A stretch of 64,000 nucleotides of DNA, from NCBI GenBank assembly GCA_965240325.2, contig OZ251229.1, positions 558,001 to 622,000 on the forward strand, read 5' to 3'. The stretch's first letter is position 1, and the number at the start of each line of letters is the position of its first letter. The position numbers and the translations under genes were made by a program. The notes under the pieces are model-generated. The model saw nothing but the letters and a program-made list of their open reading frames with translations. It searched no databases and was not told where the DNA came from. Source of the stretch: Rebecca billardiae RCC1528 (Eukaryota; Protista; Haptophyta). Below, piece after piece: positions 45,170-60,892 of this stretch.

Positions 45170-45431
45170 CGATGGCCGCGATCGGCGGCGATGGCGCGGC
45201 CCGCGGGGCCGGTTGGTTCATTCGGACGATGACAATTGCTGCTGCTCGTCAAGCTGGCGGCGGTTACAAGACTGACGACTACACACTCAGTCTAGCTCCG
45301 TAGTCTCTGTCCTCTATAAAGTTGTGCTAGCATGCAGTCCACTGATGTGGCTAGTCCGTTAGATCGGGCCGACGATCCTTACTGAAAGCGGCGGCGGCGG
45401 CGGCGGTTATTATATTATTTCGATATCGATC

Positions 45432-45434
<3 letters not shown>

Positions 45435-45485
<51 letters not shown>
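45435..45485. repeat. (GA)n microsatellite
   Basis: Direct read. Confidence 0.95.
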
Positions 45486-45487
<2 letters not shown>

Positions 45488-45736
45488 ACTGGCACTAACT
45501 ACAGTAGTAACTCTAGCTACCGTAACTAGAGCCGTACAATCTACGACTCGGACTATGACATCGGAATCGTACATACGGATCGGATATTCGGCGCGGCGCG
45601 CGCGGCATGGACGACGGACGATTAGTTTGCAGCAGCAGTCGTCTGCTGCTCGCGCGGCTCTACTTCATCACGACGACATATGCCTGCTGCTGATCACGTG
45701 ACATGGCCGAGGCCGACGGTGTCAAGCCGTTAGCGC

Positions 45737-48700
45737 TCAGCCGCCGCGCCCGGCGCCGTCCGCGGCGCCCGTCGTGCGCGCGCAGACGAAGTGGTGGTAT
45801 GGTCGCGCGCCGGGAAGCGAGGAGCGACAGTTGGAGACTACCCAACCTTGTGGCGTGTGCAGTGCGCACGCGGTGGGCGAGTCGCCGCGCGGCACGTTTG
45901 CCTCCGACGTGTCGGCGGCGGGCACGCCATGGTCGCCGTGCTCGGCTGCCTCGCCGCGCGCCCAGCCGGTGTAGTCCGCGGGCGCCAGCGCGCTGCCGTC
46001 CTCCGCCCACCGCCAGCGGCCGCCGGGGGTGCGCCAGAGGCCGATCCACGCATAGGCGGAGTCGACGGCGCGCATGCACTGCACGAGCCGATCGTCCTCC
46101 GCCGTGCGGACGCTCGCGAGCGCGCCGCCCTCGGCCGCGCACGCCGCGCGCGCGTGCGTCCACTCCTCCATGCTCGGCGCGCCGAACGGGCGCGCGCGCG
46201 CGCTCGAGAGTCGATAGCTGAGCGCGGCGCCGGCCGACGCGCTGGGCCGCCAGCCGGCTTCGTCGGGCGCGTGCGCTGCGAGCAGCGCGGCGCACGCGCC
46301 GCAGTCCGCCTGGCCTGTGCCGCCGAGCGCGGCGCCGAGGGCCGCGAGCGCGCCGAGCGGCAGCAGCGCGAGCACCGCCCAGCAGAGGCCGCGCAGCGCG
46401 GGCACGAGCCAGCGCGCGGCCGGCCCGCGGCCCCCGCTGCCGCTCGAGGAGCCGAACGAGTTGGTCGAGGCGTTGGCGCTCAGGGCGGGGTTGCCGGAGC
46501 CCCGGCGCGAGCTCGCGGCCGAGTGCCCGCGCGCCCTGCCCGTGACAGACGCCACGTGGCCGCGCGCCCCGGCCTCCTCCTCATCGTCCGAGCCCTCATC
46601 GGCGCTGCCGCGCGCCGCGACCACCGCTCCGACTCCGAGCAGGCTCTCGGTGGCCTCGGCCTCAAACGACGCGTGCGCGGCGGCGGAGGCCTCGTACAGG
46701 CGCGCGTGGTGCAGCAGCGCGCGCGCGCGCTGGTTGAACGTGTCGAACGAGCCGCACGCCACCTCGATGCACGCGCGCAGCCGGTCGTAGTCGTCCTGCA
46801 TGGCGCACGTTGCCTCGGCCGCGTCAAAGGTCGCCAGCTCGGCCGCGTGCGCGCCGGGCAGCATGCGGATCTCGACGCCCTCCTGCGCGGGCGCGTGCTG
46901 CCGCGACATGGCGCCCGAGAGCGTGGTGCCGAGCGAGCACGCGGAGGAGACGGAGGCGTTCGACGCCGCGCGGACGAGGCGCGGCTTCGTCGGCGAGTTG
47001 AGCAGCGCGCCCGGCGTGCCGCAGCCGCCGCCGCTCAGCCGCTCAGCCAGCTTGGCCGAGCTCGCGCCGCCGAAGGAGCCGCCGCGCTGCCGCCACGGCG
47101 ACGGAGACGCGGCCGCCGACGAGAGAGCGCCGGGCAGACGCAGAGCGCCCGGGTCGAGCGTGCGCCGCTTGAAGCTGCCGGTGCCTCCGCCCGCGCTGTG
47201 CTCGCCCGCGGCGGCCTGCAGCGCAGCGACCACCGCCGGGGAGCTCACGTCCCCACTGCCGCTGCGCTCGGCACGGCCGGCGCCGCGCCCGCCGCCACTT
47301 GCCCGCGTCGTGGGTGTGACGGGGCTCCGAGCGCCGGTCGGCGTGCGGAGGTCCTTGGTGGGCGGCACGTCGACGGAGAGGCCGGCCGGGCGCGTGGGCA
47401 CGGTCGAGGGGTCCGGCTCGCCCTCCTCCCGATGCGGCTCGAGCCCCTCGTCGTCGGGCGCCGAGCGCGGCGTCAGCACTGCCGACGAGTTTGCATCGGA
47501 CAGCGCGGCCGACGCGCGCGTCAGCCGGATGGGCGGCGTGCGGCGGCCGCGCTCAGGGGCCGCGTCGGCGTCGGCGTCGGCGGCGGGCTCGGCCGCGGGC
47601 GCGCCGACGTCGGGGCGCGAGCCCACCGTCGAAGCGAGCGTCGACTCGTCCCGGGCCTCGCCCTCCGGATCCTCCCGCACCGCACGCGAGAGCGCGCCCA
47701 GCTCTCGCTCTGCGCTACGCTCTGCGCCTCGCCCTGCGCCGTCCTCCGGCTCAGCGGACGGGAGGGCGGGCTGCACGCGCGAGCGCACGCCGCTCGGGCT
47801 CGTGTCGGTGGCCTCCTGCGCGGCGAGGAGCGCGGCGCTGATGCGGCTGGGCGAGGGCGGCGGCACGCCCACGGCCGCCGCGCCGGGCACGCCCAGCTGC
47901 CCGCCGCGCGCGCCCCCGCCACTCCGCACCCTGTGCAGCACGTCTTCGGAGCTGTGAGCGCGCCGGGCGAAGCCGCCGCGCAGCATCGGCGGCGGCGCGC
48001 GCCCGTGGCCGTTGGCGTTGGCGACGCCGTGCGAGCCGCCGCCGCTGCAGCGCGTGGAGCCGTCAAAGTGCACGCTCTTGCTGAAGCTGCCCGCGCCGCC
48101 GCCGCCGCGCTCGTCTGCCGCCAGGCCCATGTCTGTGCGCCGCCGATCGACGGGCGTGACGGGGCCGCTGCGCGCCGGGGGCCGGGCGCTGCGACGCCCG
48201 TCCGCGCTCGCAGCCTCGCCGCGGCTGCTCGTGCCGCCCGCCGCGGCGCCCGGCCCGGCGGCGGGGACGGCGGCGAGCTCGCCGGGCGTGGAGCACGAGG
48301 CCGCCGAGCTGTGCGCGCCGCGAGCGAACCGCTCCGGGCTGCTGGCGCGCAGAGACGGGCTGCTCAGCCGATCGCTGGCAGTGCCGCCGCCGCCGCCGCC
48401 GGCGCCGCCGTGCGCGCCTCGGCCCTGGTGCATCTGGTCGAAGACGAAGAGCTCGATGGCGCACCACATCCGCTTGAGGTACGTCGGGCCCGCGAGCACG
48501 AGCAGCGAGCGGCAGCCCGCCAGATAGATGGGCAGGTGAGGCAGGTCGCGCGGCGGGTCTGTCTGGTCGATGCACGCGCGGTCCAGCCACAGCCGAGGCT
48601 CGCGCCCGTAGTACCTGACGAACTGCGCGCGCCACGCGCTGAGCGCGCTCCAGCGCGCCGAGGCGGAGTCATGCCAGCTGCACGCGCGGCGGGGCGGGGA

Positions 48701-50127
48701 GGCAGGAGGGCACGCGCGCGTGAGCCGCGGCGGCGCGGCGGCGCGCACGAGGCCGCGCCGCGCGCGTGCGCGCCGCACGGCGCGTATAGCGCTCACGAGT
48801 GAGACACAAAGGCGTCGACGCCGTCGATGGCGGCCGGCTCGGAGAGCTCGTACCACGAGTTGTCGACGGGCGCGACGCTCGCCGAGCCGCCTCCGCCGCC
48901 GCCGCCCGCGAGCGAGAGCATCGCCGCCGCCGACGGGAGCTCGGCGCCGCGCGGCGTCGGCTGGCGCGCTCGCTCAAAGACGGCGGGCGTGAGCTTGTCC
49001 GCCGAGATGCAGCGGAAGCGGGACTCGGCGGTGGCGATGGCGTGCTGCGCGTCCTGCGTGGAGCCGAGGAGCGTGGCGATGCCCGCGGCCGCGGAGACCC
49101 CCTCGCCCCGCGCCGCGAGCCAGTTGTGCACGCGCAGCTGCACCGACGGGTGCACGCAGAAGGCCGCGCCGCCGAGGGTGACGGCCACAAACAGACCCAT
49201 CGGCAGGAGCGACGCCTCCGGCCGCGTGGGCGTGGGCGCGAGGGCGAGGGTGGCGAGGAGGTGGTACGCGCCCGCCGCGGCGTGCGCGGCGTACACGCAG
49301 CCCGCCACGCGCCACAGCCGCAGCAGCAGCCGCCGCGTCGGCACCGAGCCGCGCCGGAGCGCGACCGCGCCGAGCAGGTAGCACGAGCCGCACGCGCACG
49401 CGCCCGCCGCGTACAGCAGCGCGACCGCGTCGAGGCGGAAGCGGAGCGAGCCGCGGCACGCGCGCGCGCCCAGGTCGTGCTGGACGTGCGCGAGCCCCGC
49501 CGCCGCGCTCGCGCCGCACGCCACCGCGAGGAACACCACCACGAACCACGTCACCGCGCGCACCGCGTGCGCGTCGGTCGGGGGCAGCGCGAGCACGAGG
49601 AGCGGCAGCACGGCGCTCGCGAGCGCGCCGCCGATGTACCAGAGGGCGGAGTGCGCGGGCGTGCCCGCGTACAGGCCCGCGGCGATGAGACCAATCAGCA
49701 CGCCCGCCGCGAGTGGCGGCCAGCTCACGCGCCGCCGGTACGAGCGGCCGGCGCGGCGCGCCTCCGCGAGCTGTGCCTGCATCCGCTCGATCGTCGGCTC
49801 CGACGGGCGGCGGTAGCGCGTGGACTCGGCGGTGGCGGTTGTCGGCGAGGGCGGCGTCGCCTGCTGCGCGGGGCCAAGCGTGCGCAACCCCAGCCGACGC
49901 CGCCGCTTCGAGGCGGACGAGGCCGGGCTCCGCTCGTCCGACTCTGTCGAGCGCGGCGACATGTTGACGCTGTGCCTTGCCGCCGCCGGTGCCAGCGCGC
50001 TCGGCTCGTCGACCGGAATCTGGCGCGTGACGCGCAGCGGCATGCCGCCGACTAGGGCGACCTCCGCGTCCGCGCCGCGGCGGTCAGCGGCGGCGCCTGT
50101 GCTCGCATCGGTGGCGGCTGGCGACAT
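45737..50127 (-). CDS. Multi-TM + TIR-like domain + TM + C-type lectin receptor-like protein (~1420 aa)
   Basis: Intron 48678-48796 joins DAFVSHS|WHD; LWLDRACIDQ, LPIYLAGCRSLLVLAGPTYLKRMWCAIELF; CTLD W..ARAAC...GGALASV, AWIGL, WRW.DG, YTGWARGE, FVC. Confidence 0.85.
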
Positions 50128-50363: not shown

Positions 50364-51979
50364 GGCCCGCGGTGCAGGGCGGAGCGCGCAGCGTGGAGCC
50401 CGCACCAGCGGGCCCGAACCACGTTTCAAAAAGATCTTTGATCAAGAAAAAAGGGACGGGGGGCGATTTTTAGGGCTGGCGGAGACCGAGTTTCGAGTTT
50501 TTGAGATCGCATAGAGAGGTCTATTAGGCCGAAAATAAGCGCGTCCAGCTCATTCCCTTAAGTAAAGTGCGATCTGGACGTCAGCTGGACGTGACATTAA
50601 CGTAACGGTTCGTTACGAGCGCGATTTTGTGGGTAGACTCTCGTTCATGTGTGATAGTTTGCCTCCGCCTTGATGAATATGAACTTGGCTTCGCGGCGGT
50701 TGGTATCTAGAGTCTAAAACCCGCAAGCCTTATTGAAAATACCCGCGCAGCTATTCGTTGCCAGCCCATTCCATAGTCACTGACTTACCGAGCTGGCGAG
50801 CTCAAAACCTGCCGTCGTCGCAAGGACGACGTGCTGTGCAGGTTTCTTCTGCTGGGGTGGCGAGCGAGCCTCGACGACTCTTGGTTGGTCCGCAAGGGGG
50901 CGCTCGATGGGCAGGTGCGCGTGGCAAGTGCCGAGTGGCGCCTGGAGCGCGCGTCTGCGGCGGGTCCCGACGGCCGTCGACATCGCGTTCGTGCCCGCTC
51001 ACTAGTCACTCCGCACGCCCCTGCCGCGCCCTGTCGATGCCTGCGCGGCCGGCCGGCGCGCCGGCCGCGCCGCCGCCGCCGCAGCCGCCGCCCTGTGTTC
51101 GGGCTCTCGCAAGCTCGGGGGCAGCGGCGCATGATGCCGGACTGATCGATCTCGGAGTCTCCGACTTCACCACACGCCCCCCTTGCCATGCCTCTCCGCC
51201 AGGGTCTCCCAGAACTCTTCTTCAGAGCAGGCGCAAGTCGAACTCGGAACTGGCCGCGGCCCCGCGCGCCGTCGGCTCCCCGTGGCTGTCAGCTCCGCGT
51301 GGCCTGGGCGCCTGGCGTGCCCAGAGCTGGCCGTGCCTCTGCGACGCGTGCCGAGCCTGACCGAGGTGTGTCACCCCGTGCACGCGCGGCGCGCGCAAGC
51401 ACCGGTGCTGCATGGCTGCTCGCACCGTGCTCCCTGGCTCGCGGTCAGTCAGCTCGGCCGCGTGGTGCCTGGTGTGCACGTAGAGTCGCGCTCATGCGTC
51501 GCTCACGCCTCGCGCCCGCCTGTCGGCCGTCGCGCAGGCGCGCAGGTCGAACCCTACTGACCTGCAGATCATCTACTCCTGCGCTGCTGGCGTCGCGGCG
51601 ACGACGGTCAGCGGCAGGCCCGAACGAACGGTCGAATCCGCGCGGTCCCGCGCCGTCCGGCTCCCTGGCTGTCAGTCAGCTCCGCCGGTGGCCTGGCGTG
51701 CAAGAGTCGCGCTCGTGCGTCGATCACGCCGAGTCGCATCCGCCTGTCGGCCGTCGCGCACGCGCAGGGGGTCAGGTAAGGGCCGTCTGTGATGAGGGCA
51801 GCTCGGCCGACGACCGACATCCACACTCGGCGCACGCCGGCGGCGGCGCGGCGCTGGGGCGGCGCGCCGCTGGATGGAGTCTAGTTACACGTGTACGGGA
51901 CGACTGCGACGGAGGGTGCACCGCCACCGCGGGCCCCGAACTACGTTCGTTCTACGGAAAAGGACCGCGGAACGCGGTC
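50364..51979. mobile_element. Dispersed ~1.6-kb non-autonomous element, copy 1
   Basis: Shares both ends and much of the interior with 59223-60892; AT on both flanks; hairpins at each end. Confidence 0.85.
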
Positions 51980-59222: not shown

Positions 59223-60892
59223 GGCCCGCGGTGCAGGGCGGAGCGCGCAGCGTGGAGCCCGCACCAGCGGGCCCGAACAACGTTTCAAAAAGATCTTTGA
59301 TCAAGAAAAAAGGGACGGGGGACGATTTTCATGGCTGGAGGAGACCGAGTTTCGATTTTGAGACGACTCCCTTACAGGTGCATTAGCGTCGAAAAAGGTC
59401 GCGCCCACGGCAAGTTCATAGTAAAGCGTGGAGTGACGCCCGTCCAAAAAACTTCACGCCCTTTAGGATCCCTAACGTAACGAACCGTTACAAGCGATTT
59501 TTCCGGCCAATGAGATTGCAGCAAGGTCCAAGGTCAAGGAGCGATGACGTATCTAGATACAGATTGCCGCGAACCGATGTGACCATGTACGTCCCTTGAA
59601 TCAGTTGAATCAACTATTCAATCGCGCCGTGTCTGTATCAGGAGCCGACGAGGCAAGGGTCAGTAGCCGATGGGCCAACCTCGGCGAATCTCAATACTAT
59701 CTGACGCGAACGGACTTGGTTGGGCGCGCGCGTGGCCCCGGGCGGCGGCCCACCAGAGGCGGCCCGCGTTTGGAGGCGAGCCACGGGCACGAGGCTCACG
59801 AGCGACCGGGTGAGGACGGCGATGGGCAGGTGCGCGCGGCGAATGGCGCCTGGAGCGCGCGGCTGCGGCGGGTCCCGACTGCCGTCGACATCGCGTTCGT
59901 CGTGCCCCCGCTCACTCCGCGCGCCCCCGCCGCCCCTGCCGCCCTGTCGATGCCTCGGCGCGGCCTTGCGCGGCCCCGGCGCGTCCGCGAGCCGGCGCCG
60001 CAGCCGCCGCCCTGTGTTCGGGCTCTCGCAAGCTCGGGGGCAGCGGCGCCTGATGCCGGACTGATCGATCTCTGAGCCTTCGACTTCACCACGCGCCGCC
60101 CTTGCCATGCCTTTCCGGGGTCTCCCAGAACTCTTCTTGATTGAGAGAGAGCAGGCGCGCCGACGATCCGAGTCCATCGTCGGTCGACTCTGAGCGAGGG
60201 CTACGCCTCGGAACTGAACGGTACTCTACGAGGAGGACGAGCTGCGCGGGCGACGGTGGTGCGTGACGTCCCCAGAGCTGGCCGTGCCTCTGCAACGCGT
60301 GCCGAGCCTGATCGAGGTGTGTCAGCTGCCCGTGCACGCGCGGCGAGTGCGCGAACCGGATCACCGGTGCCCTCGCACCTCGGCACCGTGCTCCCTCGGG
60401 CTGTCAGCTCCGCGTGGCCTGGCGTGCACGTAGAGTTGCGCTCATGCGTCGATCACGCCTCGCGCCCGCCTGTCGGCCGTCGCGCAGGCGCTGGTCGAAC
60501 CCTACTCGGACCCTACTCCTCCAGCCCTACTCCCGGGCGCTGCCGGCGCGGGGGGTGACCCCGGGGACAGCGGTCAGCAGCAGCGGCCCGAACGAATCCG
60601 CGGCCCCGCACCGTGCTCCCTGGCTGTCAGCTCCGCGTGGCCTGGTGTGCACGTGGAGTCGCGCTCATGCGTCGATCACGCCTCGTCGCATCCGCCTGTA
60701 CACAATCGGCGCCGCGCCGGCGGCTGCAATGGGCCCGCCCGGCGCGGCGGGCGGCGGCGCGCCGCTGATGGAGTCTAGTTGTACGGGCATATGCAACTGG
60801 TCTGTCAATAGACGACTGCGACGGAGGGTGCACCGCCACCGCGGGCCCTGAACTACGTTCGTTCTACGGAAAAAGGACCGCGGAACGCGGTC
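59223..60892. mobile_element. Dispersed ~1.67-kb non-autonomous element, copy 2
   Basis: Starts GGCCCGCGGTGCAGGG, ends GACCGCGGAACGCGGTC; ATAT on both flanks. Confidence 0.85.

What the first reader, a model, noticed from the sequence alone, without database searches (positions are those of the whole stretch)
45737..50127. Candidate Toll-like-receptor analogue: TIR-like domain wired to a C-type lectin ectodomain
Seen: one spliced gene encodes about 6 N-terminal TM helices, a domain reading FVSHSW..WLD..CI..LLVL...YLKRMWCAIEL, a further hydrophobic helix, and a terminal C-type lectin domain. Known: FxSH/Y and WCxxEL are TIR hallmarks, the Glu of WCxxEL is the catalytic residue of NAD-cleaving TIRs (SARM1, plant and bacterial), and CTLDs often bind glycans. 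Inference: an extracellular lectin sensing prey, bacterial or viral glycans could drive a cytosolic TIR NADase signal in a unicellular alga. I do not recognise this architecture as characterised.
Basis: partly seen in the sequence, partly recalled or inferred. Interest (0 to 1): 0.85.

Follow-up and report, generated by a model that had tools for sequence, protein, structure and literature searches.

The report
Algal membrane TIR-like protein with lectin domain
This very GC-rich haptophyte alga has an intact two-exon gene for a seven-helix membrane protein with an immune-type TIR fold inside the cell and a C-type-lectin fold outside, so it looks like a surface receptor of a large unstudied protist family, but this copy has about 505 extra residues inside the TIR fold and no activity or transcript has been shown.

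Summary
On the minus strand, ATG 50127 to stop 45737, with one 119-nt GT..AG intron (48678-48796), encodes 1,423 aa. The parts in order are a disordered N-terminus, six membrane helices, a TIR-superfamily domain, a seventh helix and a C-type lectin-like domain (Pfam PF00059, E 1e-9).

The TIR-like domain matches a profile of a family with more than 5,000 clusters (E 7e-49 and 6e-11). Every invariant residue is kept, including the Glu of WCAIEL. A confident model of the closest homologue's domain (Diacronema lutheri) matches only TIR domains, with SARM1 at Z 10.2. It misses the Pfam TIR and HET thresholds.

It has strong in-frame codon periodicity, so it looks translated.

The lectin-like domain lacks the EPN/QPD and WND sugar and calcium motifs, so glycan sensing is unsupported. 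No RNA run was listed. The single-gene reading rests on an intronless collinear D. lutheri homologue.

Relatives elsewhere carry N-terminal lectin or LRR ectodomains on the same 6TM-TIR core. This scan had already noted about ten such genes in this genome. A 2025 paper describes membrane TIR proteins in another haptophyte, without lectins.

The parts
48797..50127 (-). Coding exon 1 (residues 1-443 plus two bases of codon 444). It starts at the first ATG of the ORF.
   Evidence: The same ORF (P0153, 444 aa up to the stop inside the intron) is found at 100% identity on two independent Logan contigs.
48678..48796 (-). Intron of 119 nt, GTGAGC...GTGCAG, phase 2, 85% GC.
   Evidence: Removing it gives an ungapped match to the family profile across the junction.
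45737..48677 (-). Coding exon 2 (residues 444-1423, with the stop at 45737-45739).
49801..50127 (-). N-terminal segment predicted to be disordered and Arg-rich (residues 1-109). It is not conserved in the closest homologue.
   Evidence: pLDDT is below 50. P0002 aligns only from residue 107 onwards.
49153..49800 (-). Six-helix membrane core (residues 110-325).
   Evidence: The AlphaFold model has pLDDT of about 85-95 over six long helices. Hydropathy peaks agree. The core aligns with the cores of P0002, P0137, P0147 and P0118. No convincing match to a solved fold was found.
48856..49152 (-). Conserved juxtamembrane linker (residues 326-424), including the AAAxIAxLxG-type helix shared across the family.
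   Evidence: Consensus of alignments A3 and A4; helices at 327-370.
48425..48855 (-). TIR-like domain, first two thirds (residues 425-528; betaA to alphaC; spans the intron). Motifs: FVSHSWHD, WLDRACIDQ, LLVLAGPTY, RMWCAIELF.
   Evidence: Family profile positions 3-106, 151.9 bits, E 7e-49. All invariant residues are present.
48452..48454 (-). Codon of Glu519 (the E of WCAIEL), the candidate catalytic residue.
   Evidence: It is invariant in 85 family representatives. It aligns with the Glu of WCLNEL in the SNC1 TIR domain and of WCQYEL in a TLR TIR domain.
46877..48424 (-). In-frame low-complexity insert (residues 529-1044; A 17%, G 16%, S 13%, R 11%, P 10%) in the alphaC-betaD loop of the TIR-like domain.
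   Evidence: The Glu-to-Cys spacing is 548 aa here, against 34-86 aa (median 42) in 85 relatives. GC3 is 0.92 against 0.77 and 0.72 at positions 1 and 2. The excess of 0.175 compares with 0.022 +/- 0.012 in shuffles, and it holds in every 100-codon block. The gene frame has no stops, against 5 in each other sense frame. No Pfam match. No other copy in the window. The first 225 residues are confirmed by independent contigs.
46706..46876 (-). TIR-like domain, last third (residues 1045-1101; betaD to the C-terminal helices).
   Evidence: Family profile positions 128-174, 28.5 bits, E 6e-11. It is collinear with P0002 residues 424-480.
46412..46705 (-). Low-complexity linker (residues 1102-1199).
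46325..46411 (-). Seventh membrane helix (residues about 1200-1228). Arg residues lie on its N-terminal side, and acidic or neutral residues with Cys lie after it.
   Evidence: Hydropathy peak of 2.15 at 1208-1226. It aligns with the corresponding helix of P0002.
45773..46207 (-). C-type lectin-like domain (residues about 1268-1412). The four canonical Cys are present, but it has EAA and WVV in place of EPN/QPD and WND.
   Evidence: Pfam PF00059, E 1.3e-9, 39.2 bits against a cutoff of 22.6. PDB matches to PLA2R (3e-15), NKG2D (6e-14) and DC-SIGN (6e-8). Motif alignment with P0137 and P0147.

Best explanation
This is one intact gene and a paralogue of a haptophyte family of multi-pass membrane proteins. 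The family is built on a conserved core of six membrane helices followed by a cytosolic TIR-superfamily domain. In this gene the core is followed by a seventh helix and an extracellular C-type lectin-like domain. The most likely working model is a cell-surface receptor. A ligand bound by the ectodomain, probably not a classical calcium-dependent sugar ligand in this copy, would change how the membrane core packs or clusters. That change would bring TIR-like domains together so that the invariant Glu cleaves NAD+ or makes an NAD-derived signal. This copy also carries a translated, disordered insert of about 505 aa in a surface loop of the TIR fold, which could tether partners or hold the domain in check. 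Shown here: the gene structure, the domains, the TIR fold of a close homologue, the conservation of the Glu, and the recurrence of ectodomain plus 6TM-TIR designs. Inferred: the topology, ligand binding, oligomerisation, enzymatic output and any immune role.
For: Gene model and splice. TIR fold: the domain of P0002 (57% identical to this gene's core) was modelled with an 85-sequence alignment (pLDDT 88.5). All top 50 Foldseek PDB hits are TIR domains (SNC1, RUN1, SPARTA; E from 2.4e-4). The top 20 hits of an independent aligner are also all TIR (SARM1 Z 10.2, RPP1 Z 10.0). The nearest ESM Atlas clusters are haptophyte TIR-named proteins, followed by plant and bacterial TIRs. Sub-threshold PDB sequence hits are almost all TIR, with the Glu aligned. 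Family size and invariant residues. This gene keeps them all. The architecture occurs as one gene elsewhere: P0002 is encoded by one uninterrupted 2,370-nt ORF in the D. lutheri assembly, which was annotated with RNA-seq guidance (PMC8379373). It is collinear with this gene from TM1 to the lectin domain. Sensor modules recur: P0137 and P0147 have a signal peptide, an N-terminal CTLD, one TM, the same 6TM core and the TIR-like domain. P0118 and P0040 carry LRRs in that position. Positive-inside counts are about 15 Arg on the cytosolic side and 5 outside (read). TIR domains from protists and a green alga are catalytically active, and TIR genes respond to virus in another haptophyte (10.64898/2026.04.20.719644; PMC12489294).
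Against: No transcript evidence was available, as no RNA run was listed. The fold was modelled on a homologue, not on this protein, whose domain is split by an intron and a 505-aa insert. An insert of that size is an extreme outlier in the family and might impair folding or self-association. The domain does not reach the Pfam TIR or HET thresholds. The CTLD lacks the canonical sugar and calcium ligands. The 6TM core resembles no solved protein, so how a signal would cross the membrane is unknown. The topology is predicted only.
Confidence: 0.5

Rival explanations
1. The same protein, but the TIR-like domain is not an enzyme. It would act as a HET-like or adaptor-type interaction or cell-death module, for example in self/non-self or gamete recognition between algal cells, with the CTLD as an adhesion or recognition surface.
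For: 58 of 85 family domains give sub-threshold matches to Pfam HET at the WxDxxCIxQ motif, as does this gene (E 0.054). HET is a fungal cell-death and allorecognition domain with reported remote homology to TIR (PMC10197012). Many animal TIR domains act as scaffolds. The CTLD resembles the non-sugar-binding NK-receptor type (NKG2D, CD69 hits) and lacks sugar motifs.
Against: The Glu is invariant in 85 of 85 representatives, along with the FxSHSWxD and WxD motifs, which suggests a conserved active site rather than only an interface. TIR_2 hits are stronger than HET hits (2.4e-6 against 1.4e-3). No HET cluster appears among the nearest Atlas folds.
Confidence: 0.2
2. This particular copy is a decaying or neutralised paralogue. 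The giant insert in the TIR fold and the degenerate lectin site would mean it no longer signals, even if its relatives do.
For: The insert is about 12 times the family's median loop length. The CTLD ligand motifs are lost. The family is large, and another copy in this genome was noted as split by a stop codon (s1-365424). A mobile element sits 237 bp upstream of the ATG in this assembly but not in two other read sets.
Against: The frame is open for 1,423 codons, with 3.4-4.6 stops expected by chance in the insert alone. The insert keeps strong in-frame GC3 bias. Every invariant family residue is retained in both halves of the domain. The insert lies in a surface loop with lower model confidence (pLDDT 72-76), where other members also carry smaller insertions.
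Confidence: 0.15
3. The gene model is wrong. Either the low-complexity stretch hides one or more introns, so the real protein has a normal TIR loop, or the locus is two genes.
For: There is no RNA evidence. This genome's introns are as GC-rich as its exons (85%). No public protein of 538-1,713 aa for this locus was found. Long open frames are common at 80% GC, and an antisense ORF of 1,003 aa also exists.
Against: Third-position GC excess in the gene's frame holds in every 100-codon block of the insert (z about 12 against shuffles), which a sizeable intron would not show. The antisense ORF has its GC excess at codon position 1, not 3 (frame arithmetic). Both halves of the TIR-like domain, TM7 and the CTLD are in the same frame and collinear with the intronless homologue.
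Confidence: 0.1

Closest known systems
Membrane-anchored TIR-domain proteins of the haptophyte Gephyrocapsa (Emiliania) huxleyi (PMC12489294, New Phytol 2025)
   Same: Both are from haptophytes. [quoted passage not shown] Both have structural similarity to plant and SARM1 TIRs. Those proteins were proposed to have an immune role because their expression changes during virus infection.
   Different: No C-type lectin domain, no TIR-TM-ectodomain order and no giant loop insert are described there. That paper selected genes through Pfam TIR families using HH-suite, and I did not test whether they belong to the family profiled here.
Toll-like receptors (LRR ectodomain, one TM helix, cytosolic TIR)
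   Same: Both have an ectodomain of a pattern-recognition type outside and a TIR-fold domain inside. Some relatives of this gene even carry LRRs (P0118, P0040).
   Different: This protein has seven helices instead of one, a CTLD instead of LRRs, and its ectodomain C-terminal to the TIR. It does not reach the Pfam TIR threshold. Human TLR TIR domains are known as scaffolds, whereas this family keeps the enzyme-type Glu. No shared ancestry of the whole architecture is implied.
NAD+-cleaving TIR domains (SARM1, plant TNL TIRs such as RPP1, RUN1 and SNC1, bacterial Thoeris ThsB, SPARTA)
   Same: These are the best structural matches. The Glu in the alphaC WCxxE motif aligns.
   Different: Sequence identity is about 10-18%. 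The WxDxxCIxQ block and the invariant H-S-W of the first strand set this family apart. No activity has been shown.
Fungal HET domain (Pfam PF06985)
   Same: The motif pattern is shared: an xSYxW-like first block, WxDxxCIxQ, and a later W..E block. HET has reported remote homology to TIR and is linked to cell death. Sub-threshold Pfam hits occur in most family members.
   Different: The match is below the Pfam threshold (14.3 bits against 22.5). The taxa differ (marine protists rather than fungi), and so does the membrane-bound context.
Animal C-type lectin-like receptors (NKG2D, CD69, DC-SIGN, PLA2R)
   Same: The CTLD fold is significant by sequence, and the four canonical Cys are present.
   Different: The EPN/QPD and WND motifs are absent, as in NK-receptor CTLDs that bind proteins. 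The domain is attached to a TIR-bearing multi-pass protein rather than to ITAM or ITIM tails.
Other 6TM-TIR/HET-TM-CTLD genes noted by this scan in the same genome (e.g. s1-371892, s1-367709)
   Same: They have the same domain order. The closest public homologue, P0002 (D. lutheri KFE25_010547), is of this type.
   Different: This copy is about 1.5 kb longer because of the insert in the TIR loop. It has one intron within the FVSHS|W motif, whereas P0002 is intronless.

Membership tests
TIR domain superfamily | Flavodoxin-like alpha/beta fold with a parallel sheet (betaA-betaE) and surrounding helices. | tested here: met
   The test used the domain of the closest homologue (P0002:305-486), not this protein itself. 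The model has pLDDT 88.5. All top Foldseek and VIA-align hits are TIR domains. Both halves of this gene's domain match the same family profile.
TIR domain superfamily | Match to a curated TIR profile (Pfam PF01582 or PF13676) above its gathering score. | tested here: not met
   No TIR hit for this gene at E <= 1-10. Among 85 relatives, 44 give sub-threshold TIR_2 hits (best E 2.4e-6) and 10 give TIR hits.
TIR domain superfamily | Conserved Glu at the start of alphaC (WxxxE), required for NAD+ cleavage in enzymatic TIRs. | tested here: met
   Glu519 in WCAIEL is invariant in the family. It aligns to the Glu of SNC1 WCLNEL and TLR WCQYEL. That this Glu is the catalytic residue in plant TIRs rests on established knowledge and on PMC12489294.
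TIR domain superfamily | NAD+ hydrolase or cyclase activity, or homotypic TIR assembly. | not testable with these tools
   This needs a biochemical assay.
HET domain (PF06985) | Match to the Pfam HET profile above its gathering score. | tested here: not met
   E 0.054, 14.3 bits against 22.5, covering only profile positions 45-61. 58 of 85 relatives give sub-threshold hits (best E 1.4e-3).
HET domain (PF06985) | Induction of cell death or heterokaryon incompatibility. | not testable with these tools
   This needs an experiment.
C-type lectin-like domain (PF00059) | Profile match above threshold and the four conserved disulfide Cys. | tested here: met
   39.2 bits against 22.6. PDB CTLD hits reach E 3e-15. 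Three Cys columns are invariant in the four-way alignment, and the first Cys is also present.
C-type lectin-like domain (PF00059) | Calcium and carbohydrate site: EPN or QPD tripeptide plus WND. | tested here: not met
   This gene has EAA and WVV at the aligned positions, whereas relative P0137 has QPD and WDD. The Pfam and PDB alignments stop before this region.
Toll-like receptor | LRR ectodomain, single TM helix and a C-terminal TIR (type I membrane protein). | tested here: not met
   The ectodomain is a CTLD, there are seven helices, and the ectodomain is C-terminal.
Haptophyte 6TM-TIR-like family (defined here by profile A2) | Full-length match to the family profile with all invariant residues, preceded by the conserved 6TM core and the AAAxIAxLxG linker. 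| tested here: met
   E 7e-49 and 6e-11 for the two halves. The core aligns with P0002, P0137, P0147 and P0118. The only departure is the 505-aa loop insert.

The most novel reading that the evidence does not exclude
Haptophytes and other marine protists may have built their own pattern-recognition receptors from a 6TM-TIR core. Interchangeable 'one helix plus ectodomain' cassettes (C-type lectin, LRR and others) are attached at either end of that core. These receptors may signal by Glu-dependent NAD+ chemistry. In this copy, a 505-aa disordered insert in the TIR loop would add a regulatory or tethering layer not seen in any described TIR protein.
Probability: 0.3. Interest if true: 0.8.

Novelty: new variant of a known kind. 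Interest (0 to 1): 0.58.

Why it matters
How unicellular algae sense viruses, bacteria or prey at their surface is largely unknown. TIR genes have recently been tied to virus resistance in a bloom-forming haptophyte (PMC12489294), and protist TIR domains have been shown to be active enzymes (10.64898/2026.04.20.719644). A large family of more than 5,000 sequence clusters places a TIR-fold domain directly behind a membrane core, and it repeatedly acquires lectin or LRR ectodomains. That gives concrete, testable receptor candidates. It would also be an example of TLR-like logic assembled independently, from different parts and in a different order. This copy offers a natural test of how much a TIR fold tolerates in its alphaC-betaD loop.

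Tried and rejected
- RNA evidence: the look-up of sequencing runs listed no RNA run, so read laying could not be used.
- Public model of this locus: a word-indexed protein search over the C-terminal half was swamped by low-complexity words and returned nothing. No public full-length model of this locus was found. Only the unspliced exon-1 ORF, P0153, turned up.
- The 6TM core: its model (pLDDT about 90) found only generic helical bundles (Z <= 9.4) and weak class-B GPCR rows (E >= 0.13, TM about 0.25). I do not treat these as evidence. A language-model search returned only unnamed haptophyte clusters.
- Rfam: no hits in the window.
- Wider distribution: family motifs found no relative in IMG/VR viral contigs. 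They found only two MAG contigs among prokaryote genomes, which I did not follow up.
- Cluster look-ups: these gave no organism names.
- Rejected, a hidden long intron in the insert, because of codon periodicity.
- Rejected, the 1,003-aa antisense ORF as a gene: its GC excess falls on codon position 1, and all homology is on the minus strand.
- Rejected, a repeat-expansion origin of the insert: only short 3-24-nt repeats are present.
- Rejected, a second family member in the window: none was found by profile search of all six frames.
Full report
**Organism and setting.** The region is about 77-81% GC and is flanked by 50-58% GC intergenic DNA. The closest public homologue is Diacronema lutheri KFE25_010547 (P0002). 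That genome is 73% GC (PMC8379373). Exon 1 of the gene occurs at 100% identity on Logan contigs from two runs, ERR14847148 and ERR14847151. I take the window to be D. lutheri or a very close relative (Pavlovales, Haptophyta).

**Gene model.** The gene lies on the minus strand.
- An ORF from ATG 50127 ends in ...DAFVSHS, followed by a stop. A second ORF in another frame continues with WHDSAS... and runs to 45737.
- The two are joined by a canonical intron, GTGAGC...GTGCAG, at 48796-48678 (119 nt, phase 2).
- The spliced CDS is 4,272 nt and encodes 1,423 aa without stops.
- Splicing makes the family-profile match continuous across the junction. Residues 425-528 align to profile positions 3-106 at 151.9 bits, against 126.1 bits for exon 2 alone.
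- No RNA run was listed for the region, so the splice and the single transcript are not shown directly.
- The indirect support is strong. P0002 has the same order of parts and aligns collinearly from TM1 to the lectin domain. It is encoded by one uninterrupted 2,370-nt ORF in the D. lutheri assembly, whose annotation used RNA-seq.

**The TIR-like domain.**
- Pfam gives no hit above threshold. HET reaches E 0.054 over the WLD..CI motif only, and TIR gives nothing.
- I built a profile from four homologues and searched 1.84 billion representative proteins. It found 5,256 clusters at E <= 1e-3 and 1,022 at E <= 1e-30.
- In 85 representatives the invariant residues are F, H, S, W, D (FxSHSWxD), W.D (WLD), L, P, G, and R.WC..E. 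This gene keeps all of them.
- Scanned one by one, 58 of the 85 domains give sub-threshold HET hits, 44 give TIR_2 hits (best 2.4e-6) and 10 give TIR hits.
- The profile's weak PDB sequence hits are almost all TIR domains (SNC1, TLR15/TLR2, SIGIRR, RPPT-TIR). The family Glu lies on the Glu of WCLNEL or WCQYEL, and DAFxSHSWHD lies on FDAFISYSEHD.
- This gene's domain is broken by an intron and an insert, so I modelled the domain of P0002 with the 85-sequence alignment. The model has pLDDT 88.5 and pTM 0.86.
- All top 50 Foldseek hits against the PDB are TIR domains (E from 2.4e-4, TM about 0.4-0.56).
- An exhaustive, Foldseek-independent aligner also ranks only TIR domains in its top 20: SARM1 at Z 10.2, and IL-18Rbeta and RPP1 at Z 10.0.
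- The ESM Atlas search finds haptophyte clusters first (TM 0.79-0.87), some auto-named TIR and one fused to H-NOX. Plant and bacterial TIRs follow at TM 0.54-0.59.
- My conclusion is that this is a TIR-superfamily fold carrying HET-like sequence motifs. It forms a distinct, very large and mostly haptophyte family that Pfam does not capture.

**The insert.**
- The profile match stops at residue 528 (just after WCAIELFVFDQM) and resumes at 1055. The strand VEIRMLPG lies at 1045-1052.
- The spacing from the invariant Glu to the next conserved Cys is 548 aa here. In 85 relatives it is 34-86 aa, with a median of 42.
- The extra residues (about 505) are rich in A, G, S, R and P and have no Pfam match.
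- They contain only short repeats and have no second copy in the window.
- They sit in the alphaC-betaD loop, which is the least confident part of the model (pLDDT 72-76).
- The stretch behaves like translated sequence. GC at codon positions 1, 2 and 3 is 0.77, 0.72 and 0.92. The third-position excess of 0.175 compares with 0.022 +/- 0.012 in 2,000 shuffles (maximum 0.079).
- The third position is the richest in every 100-codon block. The gene frame has no stops, whereas 3.4-4.6 are expected and the other two sense frames have five each.
- The 1,003-aa antisense ORF has its GC excess at its own first codon position, so it is a by-product of the sense frame.
- Independent contigs confirm the first 225 residues of the insert, with one Asp-to-Glu difference. 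Both contigs end at 47760, inside the insert.

**The membrane core.** An AlphaFold model of exon 1 with a 71-sequence alignment gives six long helices at residues 110-325, with pLDDT of about 85-95. The first roughly 100 residues are disordered. Searches against solved structures return only generic helical bundles and weak GPCR rows, so the fold is uncharacterised. A short helix with the family motif AAAxIAxLxG follows the sixth helix.

**The lectin-like domain.**
- Pfam Lectin_C is above threshold, and solved CTLDs match at up to E 3e-15.
- All these alignments end before the long-loop region.
- I aligned it with two relatives whose CTLDs match the whole Pfam model. This gene has EAA where P0137 has QPD, and WVV where P0137 has WDD. 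The disulfide Cys are conserved.
- The fold is therefore a CTLD, but the classical calcium and sugar site is absent. The best hits include NKG2D and CD69, which bind proteins.

**Topology (predicted).** Arg residues cluster before TM1, in the TM4-TM5 loop and after TM6. I count about 15 on that side against about 5 on the other, reading. Arg residues also precede TM7 (1208-1226), while the segment after it is acidic or neutral and Cys-rich. This places the N-terminus and the TIR-like domain in the cytosol and the CTLD outside.

Independent support comes from relatives with the opposite order.
- P0137 and P0147 have a signal peptide, an N-terminal CTLD, one helix, the same six-helix core and then the TIR-like domain.
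- P0118 and P0040 have LRRs in place of the CTLD, and P0124 has an EF-hand.
- In both layouts the core starts and ends on the TIR side, and the ectodomain hangs on one extra helix.
- The P0137 cluster has 14 near-identical members on 2.2-3.5-kb contigs from several sources. That fits single transcripts, although the library type is unknown.

**Comparison with what is known.**
- Remote homology between HET and TIR is published for fungi (PMC10197012).
- In Gephyrocapsa huxleyi, TIR genes with an extracellular region or multiple N-terminal helices and a conserved Glu change expression during virus infection. No lectin fusion is described there, and the authors say those genes lack additional NBS or LRR domains (PMC12489294).
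- A 2026 preprint shows that TIR domains from several protists and Chlamydomonas are active NADases.
- I found no paper on a TIR-CTLD membrane protein in algae.
- This scan had already noted about ten 6TM-TIR-TM-CTLD genes in this genome, two of them followed up with the same reading. It also noted H-NOX, nucleoside-hydrolase and PA-7TM fusions of the same domain.
- What this locus adds is the giant insert, the loss of the sugar motifs, and the observation that ectodomain cassettes attach at either end of the core.

**Mechanism and verdict.** The best reading is a surface receptor whose ectodomain controls self-association of a cytosolic, probably enzymatic, TIR-like domain. All steps beyond domain identity are inferred. 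The rivals are a non-enzymatic HET-like role, a neutralised paralogue and a wrong gene model. None is excluded without cDNA and biochemistry. I rate this a new variant of a known kind, of moderate to high interest.

Noticed in passing
window 50364-51979: This 1,616-bp segment lies 237 bp upstream of the gene's ATG. It is absent from two independent Logan contigs (L001, L002) that otherwise match the window at 99.8-100%. The empty site reads ...CATAT|CATCAGG..., which suggests a 2-bp AT duplication. A diverged second copy lies at about 59223-60892 (95% identity over the first 143 bp, 73% over the last 1,075 bp). It looks like a polymorphic mobile-element insertion in the gene's promoter region. 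It contains an internal duplication of about 224 bp (51438-51541 and 51665-51765).
   Followed up: partly
window 47760 (L001 and L002 ends): Both short-read contigs that carry exon 1 stop at exactly the same base inside the low-complexity insert. This suggests a coverage drop or a polymorphism at this very GC-rich stretch.
   Followed up: no
window 48371: There is one nucleotide difference between the window and contig L002. It changes Asp to Glu (GAT to GAG) at residue 546 within the insert.
   Followed up: partly
window 45410-45574: A (CT/GA)n-type simple repeat, read as SLSLSL... in one frame, lies in the AT-richer intergenic spacer.
   Followed up: no
L006 and L007 (MAG contigs RGVM01000075.1, CBDDTI010000524.1): Two contigs labelled as bacterial MAGs encode a partial relative of the TIR-like family (37-39% identity over about 50 residues). 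They could be eukaryotic contamination of the bins or genuine distant bacterial relatives.
   Followed up: no
P0005 (1,110 aa, metagenomic): The top hit of the profile search has two matched stretches of the TIR-like domain and about ten hydrophobic helices, so it may be a tandem or duplicated version of the core.
   Followed up: no
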